Virus record (IMG/VR): IMGVR_UViG_3300029945_000001
Location: 62,001-126,000 of that record
DNA: 64,000 nucleotides
Direction: 5' to 3' (one strand)
A program made the position numbers and the translations under genes. Below the pieces are notes generated by a model that saw nothing but the letters and a program-made list of their open reading frames with translations, was not told the origin of the DNA and searched no databases. The stretch's first letter is position 1; each line of letters opens with the position of its first letter. Positions 11,650-64,000 of the stretch are shown here, piece by piece.

Positions 11650-11936
11650 TTTAATTATATGCGCATAGTAGTACATACAACGTTTTAAAAGAAATCTGCG
11701 CACTTATATCTTGTGAAACTAAAATATGTATTTTGTTAAATGATAGAGTGGGCGATAGCCCACTCTATCATCATTTTCTTATATTGATTAACTTTATTGA
11801 CTTGTTCTTATGACTTTAGTTTTTTCAAGTTCAAATGAAACACACAAGATAGATCTGAGGATTAAACGAAGAGTTTTTAAGAAAAACTCTTCGACCGAAG
11901 ATTAATTTATTTATATAAAAAATATTTTATTTATTC

Positions 11937-59230: not shown

Positions 59231-59668
59231 ATGGATAAAGATTTTGAATATACTTTTGATACTCTTCCATTTACAGCACCATCCGATGAAGGATTTAGAG
59301 CTGGTGAAACTGATAATTTAAAATGGTATATTAATTGTGAATTACATGAAGTTGTTTCTTACATGGATAATGCTCTTAAAAAAGGATTCGCATTAAAGAC
59401 CGGTAGAGCATATGGTTCTGATGGTAAATTAACTGATCCTAAATATACTGGTCTTTATTATACAAATGAAGATCTTAATAGATATATTGAAAATACAAAT
59501 CAATATCTTAAAGAACATCCAGAACTCAAAGATATAACTGATTCATCTGCTATGATGCCTACTGTTGATACTATTATTAGATCTATGGCAAAGCTTCCAG
59601 ATGATAATATTATTAATATCGAAAGATATAAAAGGCCTCGTCGTGCTATGAGAAATAAAAAAATATAG
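59231..59668 (+). CDS. hypothetical protein
   Basis: AAGGAG RBS. Confidence 0.6.
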   Translation: MDKDFEYTFDTLPFTAPSDEGFRAGETDNLKWYINCELHEVVSYMDNALKKGFALKTGRAYGSDGKLTDPKYTGLYYTNEDLNRYIENTNQYLKEHPELKDITDSSAMMPTVDTIIRSMAKLPDDNIINIERYKRPRRAMRNKKI

Positions 59669-59707
59669 ATAGTATTTATTATATGTTTGTGAAAATGGAG
59701 TCGAAAA

Positions 59708-60031
59708 ATGATTGAAAAAAATATGGACGTCACCGATATCAATGGTGCTAAAAAGAACATCAGCGATCTGAAGGTCTTTGGTAATGGCGATACCTTCCAA
59801 CTTATCTGCAAAGCTAGTTCCCAGGAACAGGGTTGGATGAAGTCGACCAAAGCTATGGAAATCGTTGGTGTTGGCTGTGTTGTCCAGGTGACAACGCAAC
59901 AGCGCAGTCCTGACGGATCGTATGCTGTGGCAGAAGCCGTGACTTTTGTTCCAGGAACAAAGATCATCGGTGATGCTATCAATGGTCGTCGGATCGTTAT
60001 TTTCAATTACAATGATACCGATATCGAATAA
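59708..60031 (+). CDS. conserved phage protein of unknown function
   Basis: GNGDTFQLICKASS..GWMKSTKAM..GC.VQVTTQQ..AEAVTFVPG; GGAG RBS. Confidence 0.7.
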   Translation: MIEKNMDVTDINGAKKNISDLKVFGNGDTFQLICKASSQEQGWMKSTKAMEIVGVGCVVQVTTQQRSPDGSYAVAEAVTFVPGTKIIGDAINGRRIVIFNYNDTDIE

Positions 60032-60057
60032 TATTTGACTCAGTTGATATGGAAAAA

Positions 60058-60147
60058 GGATGGGTGGCCGAGTGGTTTAAGGCAACGGTCTTGAAAACCG
60101 TCGTAGGTGTGAGCTTACCGTGGGTTCGAATCCCACCCCATCCGCCA
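60058..60147 (+). tRNA. tRNA-Ser(UGA)
   Basis: GGATGGG/CCCATCC acceptor, CTTGAAA anticodon loop, long variable arm, TTCGAAT, encoded CCA. Confidence 0.97.
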
Positions 60148-60216
60148 TGTTAAATAAGTTTCAAAATATTTATACATATATATTAATTTATTGGAACCTG
60201 ATCATAAAAAGTTAAA

Positions 60217-61639
60217 CTACAGTTGAATTTCACAGTGTAGCAACCTTCTGCTCTGATCCGCACCGCCCCGCTGTGATCCGTTCTCCAGGAAAATGAGTGT
60301 CCTTTCTCATTTTAGTGTATTAGTCAACTGTGGGCTCTCGACCAAGGTGATGAAAATCATCTAAACCTGGGTATATGTTGAGAGTATAATTAAGATAGTG
60401 TTGTGACGAAGGTAACATCCGCGCCCTTCGCGTCAGGACGGCTAACCACATGCAGGTCAGTGTGCTAGCACAACACCGTAACATCTGCCACTAACATGCA
60501 ATCCGGCGACTATCAGTTTTCGAAGCATGTTTTAAAAGTCCTGATAATGCAGATGTATAGCAAATATCAAGTCGACTTGTAGAAATACAACATTCTGGTC
60601 AAGGTGCATGGAATTAACGGACCTAAACACCTTGTTGCGTCGGTTGACTTGAGAGTTCTCGTGTGGAGTTGTTGTCAATGCCGTGTCCTGGTCCTTGGAG
60701 GGGATGACGCCGTAGAAGATACCAATATGGAATACCGGAATATTCCCACATGAGCACGCTTTGTTTTCATGAGTTTTCTTTCTTTGTCCAAGTTACTGAA
60801 GATGATCTATAGCCATAGATCGAAACCTAGTTACGACGATGGTCTAACAGGCAGGACAAAGTACTGACCAGGTGTGCTGGCGCTGATATTATGCGACGTT
60901 TTATCGTTGCTGTAGATGCTGGCATATCGAAGATGTTTGTTGTGGTAAACACGCCGTTGAGATCAGCTATAGATGATCGATGATGTGGCGGTGTGCAATG
61001 AGATGATCATACGATTCCCAAGAAGGGAACTGTGATTATCTATGACTTATACACGACAGTGATCCATATGTGATCCATTGTGTGTTTGTTCTTTACATTG
61101 TTAATACCACGACGAACGTAATAACTGTGTGTTGTCTGGATAAGGGTCATGTATCCCGCAATCTGGTATCGCACTAACTCTGGTAGATATACAGTTGAGA
61201 CCGTGTCTCTAAATCTACAAGTGAGCATGTGTCTGGTGGGTTTGGGCTGAAAAAATGCCATCTGATCCACCAGACACATCTCGCGAAACCTCTTAAGTGG
61301 CGATACCGTTAGACTGAGACCCAGCTTGCTGACTAGCATTTTGTGCAGTTGGCTATGCGCGATTTATTTCGGGCATCTTCTGGCAGATATGTCGTTCTCC
61401 ACGAACCCTCCAGATCAGAGGACTTGCTCAAGATTGGTATCGTAGAGCAGGTAACTAATTTGTCCTGTAAACTATGTGATGTCGGAAAAGTCAGATCCGA
61501 TGATCTGATCAACATCATACTATCGGATGTAATGCCCCCATGGATGTTAATAGCATTTGCATTATGAGATCGGCAGATATACACATCTGATAGGAGTCGT
61601 ACCCCACACGATGAGCTCTGTGGAATCCAGAGCATCTGC
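60217..61639 (+). ncRNA. structured non-coding block A (back-to-back RNA modules)
   Basis: No credible ORF; about a dozen consecutive domains, each closed by a stem, mostly of 8-13 bp; promoter-like TATATTAA at 60179. Confidence 0.7.
60782..60861 (+). ncRNA. type I hammerhead ribozyme
   Basis: GTTA-CTGAAGA-t-GATCTAT(agcc)ATAGATC-GAAA-CC...GG-TC^TAAC, with stem I extended by CTTTGTCC/GGACAAAG. Confidence 0.85.
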
Positions 61640-61641
61640 AA

Positions 61642-61730
61642 GCGCGTATGGCGAAGCTGGCTGAAACGCATCAGACTTAAAATCTGACACATAAGAAACA
61701 CCGTGGGTTCGATCCCCACTACGCGCACCA
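61642..61730 (+). tRNA. tRNA-Leu(UAA)
   Basis: GCGCGTA/TACGCGC acceptor, TCAGA-CTTAAAA-TCTGA anticodon arm, T arm, CCA; variable region long but weakly paired. Confidence 0.9.
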
Positions 61731-61789
61731 TGAGGGGGTGTAAGTTATAACTTACACCCCTCCACCAACAATTTTCGATGACATACAAT

Positions 61790-61865
61790 GAGCACGTAAC
61801 TCAGTTGGTAGAGTACTCGACTTTTAATCGAGATGTCATGGGTTCGAGCCCCATCATGCTCACCA
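61790..61865 (+). tRNA. tRNA-Lys(UUU)
   Basis: CTCGA-CTTTTAA-TCGAG anticodon arm, 76 nt, CCA; one C.A mismatch in the acceptor stem. Confidence 0.92.
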
Positions 61866-61938
61866 TTTTTTTAAAACAAGAGACGAGCTTATCTATGTCT
61901 TCTTTTAGATATTGATAAACTCATGTTATAAAGGAAAT

Positions 61939-62014
61939 GGACGCGTAGCACAGCGGTTAGTGCCGACCGCTCATAACGGTCTGGTCGTAGGTTCGAATCC
62001 TACCGCGTCCACCA
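61939..62014 (+). tRNA. tRNA with CAU anticodon, probably tRNA-Ile2 (reads AUA after lysidine modification)
   Basis: GGACGCG/CGCGTCC acceptor, GACCG-CTCATAA-CGGTC anticodon arm; lacks initiator features. Confidence 0.85.
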
Positions 62015-62029
62015 ACCTTTTTCCATAAC

Positions 62030-63174
62030 GGTCTAGTTGGAAGTTCAGATCTCTCCGTACTGTAATAGGTAACCTCAGGAGATATAAGCATGACCAGATC
62101 ATGCAGGTTCGTTCTTCATAGATTGAACTTCTAAGACCACATCTGAGGTGCAATGCCTCGGCAGAGATAGCTATGTCATGTAGCATAAGTAAAAAAAACA
62201 CCAACGATGAAGTTGTACTCTCTAAAGAGTTAATGAACATGTTCAGACATCTTAGGTGAACATTTACACCTTCAAAAAGATGGTAGCAACAGTATGGGTG
62301 AGAACAAAGCCATCATGCTGGATATCTGGTAACAGTGTCCAGACCCATGTGCCCCCAAGAAACCATTGCGCTACGAGGATCTAGTGGAATTGATGCCATG
62401 CTTCGCATGCGCACAGGTTATAATAACCACATTGTCCTTATCTGAACATTTTTATTGACTCTCTCGGAGAAAACCCTCGTTTGTTGAAATGTTTATCACA
62501 AAGCTGTTATGACTCAATGACATAACAGTTTACCGCTTAAGGTTAACCATCTATCCCTCATCACCGTAGTACGCCTAGGAGTTGTCCTATGTGGTCCAAA
62601 ATGATGAATGATGAGCGGTGGCGAACAGCCGGGTTTGGAGACTGTGTGATATGGCCTCCTAACTGGGCTCTGTTGTTCTTTCATGCATTGACACCCAGTG
62701 TATCGAGAGAATATCGGTCCGTCTCGAACGGACAACTTTCCTGCTTTAGATCGTATGTTTTGGCATATGTCTTAATCCGCACCGGTCCGGCCGATGTATG
62801 GATATGGGCGTAACTCGTCAACGATCTGCTAACAGGCTGAAGAACATGGAAGGTATACCAGGACTACGATCGCCGGCTCTAACTTAAGTCATCTGGAGTC
62901 ACTCAGGGACTATCCTGCGGTGAACATACGATGAGAGTTATCTTGGGATCATTTCCGTATACACACAACTGCTGTGTCCATAAGTGTTCTGTGTCTGAAA
63001 GCAAGGCATGAAGTGATTTTGTCACCGCCAACCCGCTATGTGGGAGATCCGTGAAAAGGTCTCCCACTACGGTTTCTTTAGTGTAGATTAAGGTGAACAC
63101 CGAACACGGAATGGGCCTCCGCGCAACACAATCCCCCGATGTTGCTATGTTCGGTGTTCTCCTTAGTTTATACA
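62030..63174 (+). ncRNA. structured non-coding block B
   Basis: 20/21-bp stem 62227-62247/62441-62461, 12-bp stem 63095-63106/63148-63159 and many internal hairpins. Confidence 0.65.
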
Positions 63175-63242
63175 TATTAAATTCTTCAGGCAGCTGCTTA
63201 TTTTTTATTTCAAAGATAAATATATATTAATACATTGAATTC

Positions 63243-63322
63243 GCCGCAGTATCTCCTTGGCCTTCTAAGCTATTGAAAGAGTAACTGGACACATGGGGGT
63301 TCGAATCCCTCCTGCGGCGCCA
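63243..63322 (+). tRNA. atypical tRNA-Arg(UCU)-like RNA lacking a canonical D arm
   Basis: Perfect acceptor GCCGCAG/CTGCGGC+GCCA, T arm GGGGG-TTCGAAT-CCCTC, anticodon loop CTTCTAA; only 8 nt between acceptor and anticodon stems. Confidence 0.7.
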
Positions 63323-63393
63323 ATCATTTAAAATATTCTAATCCGGGATCGTCGGTCTGAGTCTGACCTGGAGACCACTAAGATACCATATAT

Positions 63394-63438
63394 CTTCTAA
63401 GCGGCAGGTCGTAGGTTCGAGTCCTACTGGGATCGCTA
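63394..63438 (+). pseudogene. 3' half of a canonical tRNA-Arg(UCU); 5' half missing
   Basis: CTTCTAA-GCGGC-AGGTC-GTAGG-TTCGAGT-CCTAC-TGGGATC-GCTA with no matching 5' acceptor, D or anticodon strand. Confidence 0.7.
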
Positions 63439-63872
63439 AGCTGCCATACATCTTCTTCAGTTTCGGGTCCTTCTGAGTAAGGCATTTGAGTATGCACACC
63501 GATCCATGAAAGTGGGGACAGTGTATCGGTTCTTTTAAAAGTTTTGGCTCCGTTAACTGAGTCTGGACTGCTCACCGGCATGTATGTGTCAGTGTTGTCG
63601 GAAAAGCATACAAATGCATTAATGGTTAGAGGGTGTCCATCTTCGGATCGGCATTTTGGCCATAGTCGCTAGAAATCAGTGAAACGGGCTGGTCTCGGGA
63701 TAAATTGTAAGTCTGACGACCGAGATAAGATTAATGACTTACCAAAGTCCTGGTGTGTTAAAAAACTTATGGTGATGTAACCAGGGATGCGAACTATGTT
63801 TGCCATCGGACGCCAAGCGATCGATGAAACCATTCTAAATTCCACTTAACTTTTAGGTCGATGTTATCGGGC

Positions 63873-63909
63873 TGTCACATGCATGGACGTAATGTCCATG
63901 TATGTGACA
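63873..63909 (+). terminator. hairpin ending the RNA cluster
   Basis: TGTCACATGCATGGAC-gtaat-GTCCATGTATGTGACA followed by TTATTTTTT. Confidence 0.75.
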
Positions 63910-64000
63910 AGTTCATTTATTTTTTAATACATTTTGAGTTTTATACAAAAAATAAATATATATTACTTATTTAGAAATATGGAGTGACTATCATGAATTA

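What the first reader, a model, noticed from the sequence alone, without database searches (positions are those of the whole stretch)
60481..60556. Compact H-type pseudoknot module and loop-loop modules within block A
Seen: inside the closing helix ACATCTGC/GCAGATGT, stem AACATGC (60493-99)/GCATGTT (60525-31) crosses stem TATCAG (60511-16)/CTGATA (60541-46). The module at 61573-61639 has two hairpins (TCGT-accccac-ACGA and GCTCTG-tggaatc-CAGAGC) whose loops are complementary (CCA/TGG). Inference: tertiary-folded aptamer- or ribozyme-like units, possibly undescribed ribozyme classes given the neighbouring hammerhead.
Basis: partly seen in the sequence, partly recalled or inferred. Interest (0 to 1): 0.6.

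Follow-up and report, generated by a model that had tools for sequence, protein, structure and literature searches.

The report
Chance-level pseudoknot inside processed phage RNAs

Summary
All stems exist exactly where stated. The support for them is weak.

- **Module 1 (60481-60556).** The 8/7/6-bp arrangement is rare in shuffles of the 4 kb non-coding region (2 of 300). The same motif occurs at 7 places in the 208 kb genome, mostly AT-rich and outside this block.
- **Crossing stem.** Given the nested stems, it has p≈0.06. It is not favoured energetically and competes with an 8-bp helix.
- **Module 2 (61573-61639).** The 3-nt loop-loop match has p≈0.26-0.29. Its closing helix has probability ~0 in nested folds.
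- **Relatives.** No Rfam family matches and no diverged homologue was found, so covariation cannot be tested.

The context is real. The window is part of a 208 kb peat jumbo phage.
- 60032-63990 is an ORF-free, GC-rich tRNA operon behind a phage promoter motif.
- A type I hammerhead-like motif predicts cleavage at 60844/60845 (1 of 2000 shuffles).
- Four peat metatranscriptomes hold exact RNA contigs over 60391-60712, 60845-61725, 62632-63030 and 63543-63809. None lies on coding flanks or on 60713-60844. One contig starts exactly at 60845.
- RNA-2 (60845-61641) folds far better than shuffles (z≈-6.9).
- Contigs span both modules intact, so there is no sign of self-cleavage in them.

The parts
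60170..60192 (+). Phage promoter-like motif (core TATATATTA at 60177) just after tRNA-Ser; the likely start of the block A transcript
   Evidence: The motif occurs 44 times on the + strand and 2 times on the - strand of the genome (about 12 expected per strand). Most copies lie just upstream of ORFs. Further copies are at 63221 and 63957.
60391..60712 (+). RNA-1 stable core: the part of the pre-hammerhead RNA that accumulates; it contains module 1
   Evidence: Exact RNA contigs lie at 60391-60665, 60405-60555, 60432-60571 and 60594-60712 in peat metatranscriptomes. There is none on 60188-60334 or 60713-60844. Fold z = +0.60.
60481..60556 (+). Module 1 of the finding: 8-bp closing helix, 7-bp hairpin stem S1, and a 6-bp candidate crossing stem S2
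   Evidence: Stems read. S1 has p>=0.93 in every context. The closing helix has p 0.97 in contexts up to 322 nt but 0.23 in longer ones. S2 has p≈0.06 by chance. Contigs span the module intact.
60432..60545 (+). Competing 8-bp helix GUCAGGAC (60432-39) / GUCCUGAU (60538-45). It uses the 3' arm of the candidate pseudoknot stem and excludes the closing helix in nested folds
   Evidence: It is in the MFE of 60391-60844, with p=0.71-0.72 in the 454-648 nt contexts.
60782..60861 (+). Type I hammerhead-like ribozyme. Stem I is CUUUGUCC-AA-GUUA / UAAC-AGGCA-GGACAAAG. The core is CUGAAGA (60796-802) plus an extra U. Stem II is 60804-10/60815-21, followed by GAAA 60822-25. Stem III is ACC/GGU. Predicted cleavage is after C60844
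   Evidence: A descriptor scan finds only this site in 60032-63990, and 1 of 2000 shuffles gives any hit. The local fold has z=-3.41 and keeps stems I and II. The X2 contig starts at 60845, and no contig covers 60713-60844 in 4 runs. No Rfam hammerhead model matches.
60845..61641 (+). RNA-2: an abundant, highly structured ~797-nt non-coding RNA. Its 5' end comes from hammerhead cleavage. Its 3' end is inferred from RNase P cleavage at the tRNA-Leu 5' end
   Evidence: Contigs lie at 60845-61247, 60854-61112, 60875-61725 and 60881-61605, at the highest depths in 3 of the 4 runs. MFE is -285.3 against -229±8 in shuffles. z is -6.7 to -6.9 on +, -2.5 on -, and about 0 in a coding control.
61573..61639 (+). 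Module 2 of the finding: two hairpins (61596-61612, 61615-61633) at the 3' end of RNA-2, ending 2 nt before tRNA-Leu. The proposed closing helix is 61573-78/61634-39
   Evidence: The hairpins have p 0.94-0.99. The closing helix has p~0 in nested folds, because it would cross the 11-bp helix 61520-30/61583-93 (p 0.98). The loop-loop match has p≈0.26-0.29 by chance. Contigs at 60875-61725 and 61472-61727 span it.
60058..60147 (+). tRNA-Ser(UGA), upstream boundary of block A
61642..61730 (+). tRNA-Leu(UAA) with encoded CCA, downstream boundary of block A. It is followed by tRNA-Lys 61790-61865 and tRNA-Met 61939-62014

Best explanation
The two modules are not separate devices. They are local helices inside two different stable non-coding RNAs, both carved out of one jumbo-phage tRNA-operon transcript.

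Proposed pathway:
1. A phage promoter at about 60177 starts + strand transcription (inferred from the motif).
2. A type I hammerhead cuts at 60844/60845. The motif is shown, and the RNA 5' start agrees with it.
3. The upstream product is trimmed back to a core of about 60391-60712, which carries module 1.
4. The downstream product, RNA-2 (60845-61641), is a strongly folded ~800-nt RNA. Its 3' end is set when RNase P releases tRNA-Leu at 61642 (inferred from standard tRNA processing).
5. The two hairpins of module 2 are therefore the 3'-terminal structure of RNA-2. They most likely help it resist 3' exonucleases and keep it from interfering with tRNA folding.

In module 1 the 7-bp hairpin is probably real. 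The closing helix is one of two competing pairings. The crossing stem and the module 2 loop-loop contact are most likely coincidental complementarity.

The function of the RNAs themselves is unproven. My best guess is a stable structured phage RNA of the kind found in phage tRNA islands, possibly part of the accessory or anti-defence equipment encoded around it.
For: - ORF-free, GC 44% block in a ~30% GC genome, with tRNAs on the + strand.
- Strand-biased promoter motif at 60177.
- Hammerhead descriptor hit unique in the region, with 1 of 2000 shuffles giving any hit.
- Exact RNA contigs in 4 peat metatranscriptomes over discrete blocks only. Depth is zero on the coding flank 59600-60040 and on 60713-60844. 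One contig starts at 60845. Both modules are spanned uncut.
- RNA-2 z about -6.9 on + against -2.5 on -.
- Module statistics and energetics.
- No Rfam family and no Pfam domain in the short ORFs.
Against: - The strict three-helix arrangement of module 1 is rare in composition-matched shuffles (2 of 300), so a real pseudoknot is not excluded.
- Nested folding programs cannot score crossing stems, so 'p=0' for such helices is a model limit.
- Contigs, not raw reads, were laid. Ends, strand and transcript continuity are therefore only suggestive.
- One contig (60875-61725) runs across the RNA-2/tRNA-Leu junction, so RNase P cleavage there is inferred, not seen.
- The hammerhead is not recognised by the Rfam models.
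Confidence: 0.6

Rival explanations
1. Module 1 is a genuine compact pseudoknot domain (aptamer, ribozyme or protein-binding fold) of a new class, and module 2 is a real loop-loop tertiary unit.
For: All three helices of module 1 are perfect Watson-Crick. The combination is found in 2 of 300 shuffles of the region. Loop lengths (11, 8 and 9 nt) are sterically compatible with the crossing. The RNA is expressed and stable. A ribozyme lies about 240 nt downstream.
Against: The same motif occurs at 7 genome loci, mostly AT-rich and outside this block. The crossing stem alone has p≈0.06, and the module 2 loop match has p≈0.26-0.29. The host RNA has z=+0.60. The pseudoknot is not favoured energetically, and a stronger competitor helix exists. 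There is no Rfam match. There is no second copy in the genome or in 49 related phages with a covariance model. Contigs span both modules uncut.
Confidence: 0.1
2. The blocks are functionless spacer DNA (decayed tRNA genes or foreign DNA) that is simply co-transcribed with the tRNAs. The RNA pieces accumulate only because they happen to be GC-rich and folded.
For: Partial tRNA copies and weak tRNA-like elements lie in the same region (62024-62051, 63243-63319, 63382-63435). No homologue was found anywhere. RNA-1 shows no excess folding.
Against: No tRNA-like match falls inside block A even at E<=10. RNA-2 folds 6-7 sd better than shuffles, and does so strand-specifically. A dedicated hammerhead sets its 5' end. 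The contigs reach depths of about 100-150 while the neighbouring genes give none. The region is 100% identical in every contig of this phage that was recovered.
Confidence: 0.2
3. RNA-2 (perhaps with the other blocks) is a new large ornate phage RNA that works like GOLLD or ROOL, that is, an RNA-only assembly near a tRNA island. In that case loop complementarities would be intermolecular contacts rather than intramolecular modules.
For: RNA-2 is about 800 nt, lies directly beside tRNAs in a phage, is very abundant and is very strongly folded. GOLLD and ROOL are described as phage or prophage RNAs, often near tRNA islands, held together by kissing loops (bioRxiv 10.1101/2024.12.08.627333).
Against: No ROOL match at E<=10, and no large-RNA family in the whole-Rfam scans. 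There is no covariation and no evidence of multimerisation. The 3-nt loop match is at chance level.
Confidence: 0.1

Closest known systems
GOLLD and ROOL large ornate RNAs of phages and prophages
   Same: Large (ROOL model 574 positions; GOLLD over 800 nt) non-coding RNAs of unknown function, encoded by phages and often near tRNA islands. RNA-2 is ~797 nt, adjoins tRNA-Leu, is abundant in RNA data and is strongly folded.
   Different: No match to ROOL or to any Rfam family. No covariation-supported structure. The 5' end is made by a hammerhead. Multimerisation was not tested.
Small stable RNAs of the phage T4 tRNA operon (species 1 and 2 RNAs; from my own knowledge, not tested here)
   Same: Non-tRNA stable RNAs that are co-transcribed with phage tRNAs, released by tRNA-processing enzymes, and still of unknown function.
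   Different: The T4 RNAs are about 120-140 nt and no ribozyme is involved. Here the RNAs are 270-800 nt and one boundary is a self-cleaving hammerhead. No sequence comparison was possible with the tools used.
Theta (minimal HDV-like) ribozymes next to phage tRNAs
   Same: Self-cleaving ribozymes embedded in phage tRNA loci that take over an RNA-processing step (PMC10879173). They have a nested double-pseudoknot topology in which two stems cross, as in module 1.
   Different: Theta ribozymes sit within ±5 nt of the tRNA. Module 1 is more than 330 nt from any tRNA. There is no room for P3/L3 and no GG for P1.1, and the first pair of the 7-bp stem is A-U, not G·U (read; motif rules from my own knowledge). 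No HDV-like Rfam family matches.
Type I hammerhead ribozyme
   Same: For the neighbouring element: CUGANGA and GAAA cores, a GUC cleavage triplet, closed stems II and III and an open stem I. An RNA 5' start lies at the predicted site.
   Different: There is an extra U between A9 and stem II, and stem III has only 3 bp with a 13-nt loop. No Rfam hammerhead model scores it. Cleavage has not been shown biochemically.
MALAT1/mascRNA-type 3'-end formation (from my own knowledge)
   Same: A long non-coding RNA whose 3' end is made by RNase P cutting at a downstream tRNA(-like) structure, leaving a structured, protective 3' terminus. Module 2 would play that role.
   Different: That is a eukaryotic system with a triple-helix ENE. 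Here the downstream element is a true tRNA-Leu, and the terminal structure is two simple hairpins. This is an analogy only.

Membership tests
Hammerhead ribozyme (type I), neighbouring element 60782-60861 | Conserved core C3-U4-G5-A6-N7-G8-A9 ... G12-A13-A14, A15.1-U16.1 pair, H17 cleavage nucleotide | tested here: met
   CUGAAGA 60796-802, GAAA 60822-25, A60825-U60843 and C60844. The descriptor scan gives a hit in 1 of 2000 shuffles. One extra U follows A9.
Hammerhead ribozyme (type I), neighbouring element 60782-60861 | Three helices around the core; stems II and III capped, stem I open | tested here: met
   Stem II has 7 bp, stem III has 3 bp, and stem I has 4 + 8 bp with an internal loop. 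Stem II and distal stem I are in the MFE.
Hammerhead ribozyme (type I), neighbouring element 60782-60861 | Match to curated Rfam hammerhead covariance models | tested here: not met
   No hammerhead family at E<=10 in 59500-64000 or in 60740-60900.
Hammerhead ribozyme (type I), neighbouring element 60782-60861 | Site-specific self-cleavage | tested here: inconclusive
   The X2 contig starts exactly at 60845. All four runs have zero contig depth on 60713-60844 and a high-depth contig starting between 60845 and 60881. Contigs cannot prove an RNA end, and end chemistry was not tested.
Known pseudoknot aptamers and small self-cleaving ribozymes in Rfam (preQ1, SAM-II/V, fluoride, ZTP, guanidine-III, HDV-like, pistol, twister, hatchet and others) | Sequence and structure match to the family model over 60481-60556 or 61573-61639 | tested here: not met
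   Whole-Rfam cmscan at gathering threshold and at E<=10 gives no hit in block A except chance-level miRNA models at 61217-61290.
   Contigs 60391-60665 and 60432-60571 span module 1. Contigs 60875-61725 and 61472-61727 span module 2. This excludes only efficient cleavage.
Conserved structured RNA motif (any class) | Homologues that keep the stems through compensatory changes | not testable with these tools
   All other contigs of this phage are 100% identical. There is no match in INPHARED phages, in 50 related jumbo phages by blastn, or in 49 by covariance model R1. The metagenome pattern scan found only the same phage.
ROOL / GOLLD large ornate RNAs | Match to the family covariance model | tested here: not met
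   ROOL RF03087 gives no hit at E<=10 in the genome. The whole-Rfam scans give no large-RNA family. My separate GOLLD query used a wrong accession recalled from memory (searched group-II-D1D4-1), so GOLLD rests only.
ROOL / GOLLD large ornate RNAs | Phage-encoded, near a tRNA island, several hundred nt, highly expressed | tested here: met
   family description.
Group I intron | Match to Intron_gpI model (P3-P7 pseudoknot core) | tested here: not met
   The only hit in the genome is at G000:185186-185529, outside the window. There is none in block A.

The most novel reading that the evidence does not exclude
The 4 kb tRNA island of this peat jumbo phage encodes a previously undescribed set of abundant structured RNAs. 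The main one is a ~800-nt RNA whose ends are made by a hammerhead (5') and RNase P (3'). This RNA would be a new class of large ornate phage RNA, in which pseudoknots such as module 1 or the 61573-78/61634-39 pairing are genuine tertiary contacts. It might serve counter-defence or RNA-only assembly.
Probability: 0.15. Interest if true: 0.75.

Novelty: new variant of a known kind. Interest (0 to 1): 0.4.

Why it matters
The pseudoknot and loop-loop modules do not currently justify a claim of new aptamers or ribozymes. The locus they drew attention to does matter. Phage tRNA islands are known to harbour enigmatic large RNAs (GOLLD, ROOL) and small ribozymes (theta). Here one operon combines a hammerhead-defined 5' end, a tRNA-defined 3' end and an ~800-nt RNA. 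That RNA is far more structured than chance and is readily assembled from environmental RNA, while the neighbouring genes are not. It sits next to an anti-defence sponge gene (Lockin). If the RNA has a function, this would be a tractable natural example of ribozyme/RNase P 'cassette' processing that yields a precise-ended long phage RNA.

Tried and rejected
1. **Known RNA families.** The whole window at gathering threshold, 59500-64000 at E<=10, and 60740-60900 alone gave only tRNAs.
2. **Group I intron.** The only hit in the genome lies outside the window.
3. **ROOL.** Nothing.
4. **GOLLD.** My query used a wrong accession from memory, RF01998, which is group-II-D1D4-1. Disregard that call.
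5. **Decayed protein gene.** The short ORFs in the blocks have no Pfam hit.
6. **Decayed tRNA array.** There is no tRNA-like hit inside block A.
7. **Internal paralogy between blocks A1, A2, B and C.** Local alignment scores equal those of shuffles.
8. **Homologues for covariation.**
   - INPHARED blastn gave nothing.
   - IMG/VR, JGI and ENA contigs of the same phage are all 100% identical.
   - The helicase cluster has only a 99%-identical variant, on a 3 kb contig.
   - The nearest helicase relatives are 33-45% identical and not syntenic.
   - blastn of block A against 50 such genomes gave only noise.
   - A relative's tRNA-array spacer also matched nothing.
   - Covariance model R1 of module 1 hit only itself.
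9. **Lockin neighbours.** The gene is mobile and has no RNA block beside it elsewhere.
10. **HDV-like or theta reading of module 1.** Rejected on missing P3/L3, P1.1 and G·U features, and on distance from any tRNA.
11. **A second hammerhead-descriptor hit at window 11855-11928.** It lies in very AT-rich sequence and I treat it as a probable false positive.

Full report
**What and where.** The window is G000:62001-126000 of a 208,374-bp IMG/VR virus record. It is a ~30% GC jumbo phage recovered repeatedly from peat and bog samples.
- Positions 60032-63990 form the only long GC-rich (44%), ORF-free stretch of the genome.
- It holds tRNA-Ser 60058-60147, tRNA-Leu 61642-61730, tRNA-Lys 61790-61865 and tRNA-Met 61939-62014, plus two weak tRNA-like elements at 63243-63319 and 63382-63435.
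- Gene callers on other assemblies of the same phage also leave these 4 kb empty.
- 'Block A' is the 1.5 kb between tRNA-Ser and tRNA-Leu.

**Is module 1 more than chance?**
- The 8/7/6 perfect Watson-Crick arrangement occurs in 2 of 300 dinucleotide shuffles of 60032-63990. That motif was defined after seeing it.
- The same motif occurs at 7 loci in the real genome, most of them AT-rich and outside this block. A reader scanning 64 kb would expect to meet one or two.
- Given the two nested helices, a 6-bp crossing stem between the loop and the linker arises in 5.8% of shuffles.
- The local MFE contains the closing helix and the 7-bp hairpin, with z=-1.99.
- The 7-bp hairpin has p>=0.93 in every context. 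The closing helix falls from 0.97 (contexts up to 322 nt) to 0.23 in longer contexts. There an 8-bp helix, 60432-39/60538-45, which also consumes the 3' arm of the crossing stem, takes over with p 0.71-0.72.
- Energetically, the nested optimum is -18.8 kcal/mol. Keeping the crossing arms free gives -14.5, and the crossing stem adds -8.5 of stacking. The pseudoknot therefore wins only if its initiation penalty is below about 4 kcal/mol. That is less than the ~9 kcal/mol of common models (the penalty value is from my own knowledge).
- The RNA that carries the module folds no better than shuffles: z=+0.60 for 60391-60712 and -0.17 for 60391-60844.

**Is module 2 more than chance?**
- The two hairpins are robust (p 0.94-0.99).
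- The 3-nt loop-loop match occurs in 26-29% of random loop pairs, and the local z is -0.18.
- The closing helix would itself cross a much stronger 11-bp helix, 61520-30/61583-93 (p=0.98). It is therefore another possible pseudoknot rather than a closing helix. A 6-mer match of that kind is also expected by chance.

**What is really there.**
1. *A phage promoter.* A motif with core TATATATTA occurs 44 times on the + strand and 2 times on the - strand, mostly just upstream of ORFs. Copies lie at 60177 (start of block A), 63221 and 63957. Block A is thus a + strand transcription unit that runs into the tRNAs.
2. *A hammerhead.* Positions 60782-60861 fit a type I hammerhead.
   - Stem I is CUUUGUCC-AA-GUUA / UAAC-AGGCA-GGACAAAG.
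   - The core is CUGAAGA, followed by one extra U.
   - Stem II has 7 bp, followed by GAAA. Stem III is ACC/GGU.
   - The cleavage triplet is GUC, with the cut after C60844.
   - A descriptor finds this site alone in the region, and in 1 of 2000 shuffles. The local fold has z=-3.41.
   - No Rfam hammerhead model scores it, so I describe it as hammerhead-like with all core features met.
3. *Expression.* Twenty-one peat metatranscriptome runs from 16 studies hold parts of the stretch. I laid four of them on 59600-64000.
   - Exact contigs (0 mismatches) cover 60391-60712, 60845/54/75/81 to 61725, 62632-63030 and 63543-63809.
   - The bin depths are fully accounted for by the listed contigs. Depth is therefore zero on the coding flank 59600-60040, and on 60188-60334, 60713-60844, 62099-62539 and 63128-63274.
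   - This pattern is not DNA carry-over.
   - In all four runs the high-depth contig begins between 60845 and 60881. In run X2 it begins exactly at 60845, the predicted first nucleotide after hammerhead cleavage.
   - Contigs cannot prove RNA ends or strand, so this is strong but indirect support.
4. *RNA-2.* RNA-2 (60845-61641) has MFE -285.3 against -229±8 for shuffles. z is -6.7 to -6.9 on the + strand, -2.5 on the - strand and about 0 for a coding control. It is a genuinely and strand-specifically structured RNA. Blocks B and C give z=-2.3 and -1.5.

**How the modules fit in.**
- Module 1 lies in the trimmed upstream hammerhead product. Module 2 is the last 67 nt of RNA-2 and ends 2 nt before the tRNA-Leu 5' end.
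- By standard tRNA processing, RNase P would create the RNA-2 3' end there. That step is inferred and was not observed; one contig actually bridges the junction.
- The two terminal hairpins are then most simply a protective, insulating 3' structure.
- Contigs span both modules uncut, in contrast to the hammerhead site. Nothing therefore suggests that they self-cleave.

**Comparison with known systems.**
- No Rfam family matches.
- Group I, ROOL and HDV-like readings fail.
- The nearest analogues in kind are GOLLD and ROOL, which are large phage RNAs near tRNA islands.
- Other analogues are theta ribozymes beside phage tRNAs and, from my own knowledge, the small stable RNAs of the T4 tRNA operon.
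- A distant relative (G006, helicase ~36% identical) also has a spread-out tRNA array. It contains a canonical CUGAUGA-stem II-GAAAC-stem III core with only a 3-bp stem I (which is why my descriptor misses it), and a weak group I-like hit. Ribozymes in the tRNA arrays of this phage group may therefore be a recurring theme. The spacers share no detectable sequence.

**Covariation could not be tested.**
- Every other contig of this phage is identical over the 4 kb.
- The next helicase relatives are at most 45% identical.
- No copy of block A or of module 1 was found by blastn, by pattern scan or by covariance model.

**Verdict.**
- The pseudoknot is statistically ambiguous, and the loop-loop contact is at chance level.
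- The aptamer or ribozyme interpretation of the modules is unsupported.
- The surrounding hammerhead-processed, abundant, structured RNAs of a phage tRNA island are real, have no described family, and deserve experimental follow-up.

Noticed in passing
window 59708-60031 (+): The 107-aa gene just upstream of tRNA-Ser is a Lockin-family protein (PF26760). It has more than 4,600 relatives at 60-80% identity in unrelated phages. The literature describes Lockin as a phage sponge for bacterial immune signals. The gene is GC-rich (about 0.43-0.51) compared with the genome, so the tRNA/RNA island adjoins an anti-defence gene.
   Followed up: partly
window 62632-63030 and 63543-63809 (+): Two further non-coding segments are present as exact RNA contigs in the peat metatranscriptomes, at depths up to about 108 and 41. 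Fold z-scores are -2.3 and -1.5. No Rfam match. They are probably additional stable RNAs of the same island.
   Followed up: partly
genome-wide; window 60177, 63221, 63957: Strongly strand-biased motif (A/G)ATATATATTA(C/T)T, with 44 copies on + and 2 on -, mostly 15-150 nt upstream of ORFs, often preceded by TTTCA. It is a likely phage-specific promoter consensus.
   Followed up: partly
window 63243-63319, 63382-63435, 62123-62135, 62024-62051: Weak or truncated tRNA-like elements (29.2 and 24.7 bits) that ARAGORN does not call. There are three copies of the anticodon-loop-like word CTTCTAAG (it would read Arg-UCU) within 1.3 kb, out of 8 on the + strand of the whole genome. A partial duplicate of the tRNA-Met 3' half is also present. 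These may be decayed or unusual tRNAs, or mimics.
   Followed up: partly
window 61735-61760 and 63873-63909: A perfect 13+13-nt palindromic hairpin lies right after tRNA-Leu, with no T-run. A 17-bp hairpin with a T-rich tail at the end of the island is a likely terminator, and is followed by the promoter motif at 63957.
   Followed up: no
G000:C1:185186-185529 (outside the window): A bona fide group I intron match (59.6 bits, above the Rfam cut-off) elsewhere in the same phage genome.
   Followed up: no
L109 (G006:C1:158500-167500, minus strand): A distant jumbo-phage relative has a tRNA array of 7-8 tRNAs with gaps of 0.5-2.5 kb. It has a hammerhead-like core (CTGATGA-GCTCA...TGAGC-GAAAC-hairpin-GTA) with only a 3-bp stem I, so my descriptor does not call it, and a weak group I intron hit (22.8 bits). 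No sequence similarity to block A.
   Followed up: partly
window 60848-60860 with 61458-61467, and 60782-60789: The 5' end of RNA-2 (GGACAAAG, the 3' strand of hammerhead stem I) can pair either with 60782-89 (hammerhead stem I) or with UUUGUCCUG at 61459-67. The latter pairing is in the MFE and centroid fold of RNA-2. This could be a post-cleavage refolding that locks the cut, but a repeat of this length is common by chance.
   Followed up: no
window 11855-11928 (+): My hammerhead descriptor also hits here, in a 640-nt AT-rich intergenic gap. There is no Rfam support, and the helices are AU/GU-rich. Probably a false positive.
   Followed up: partly
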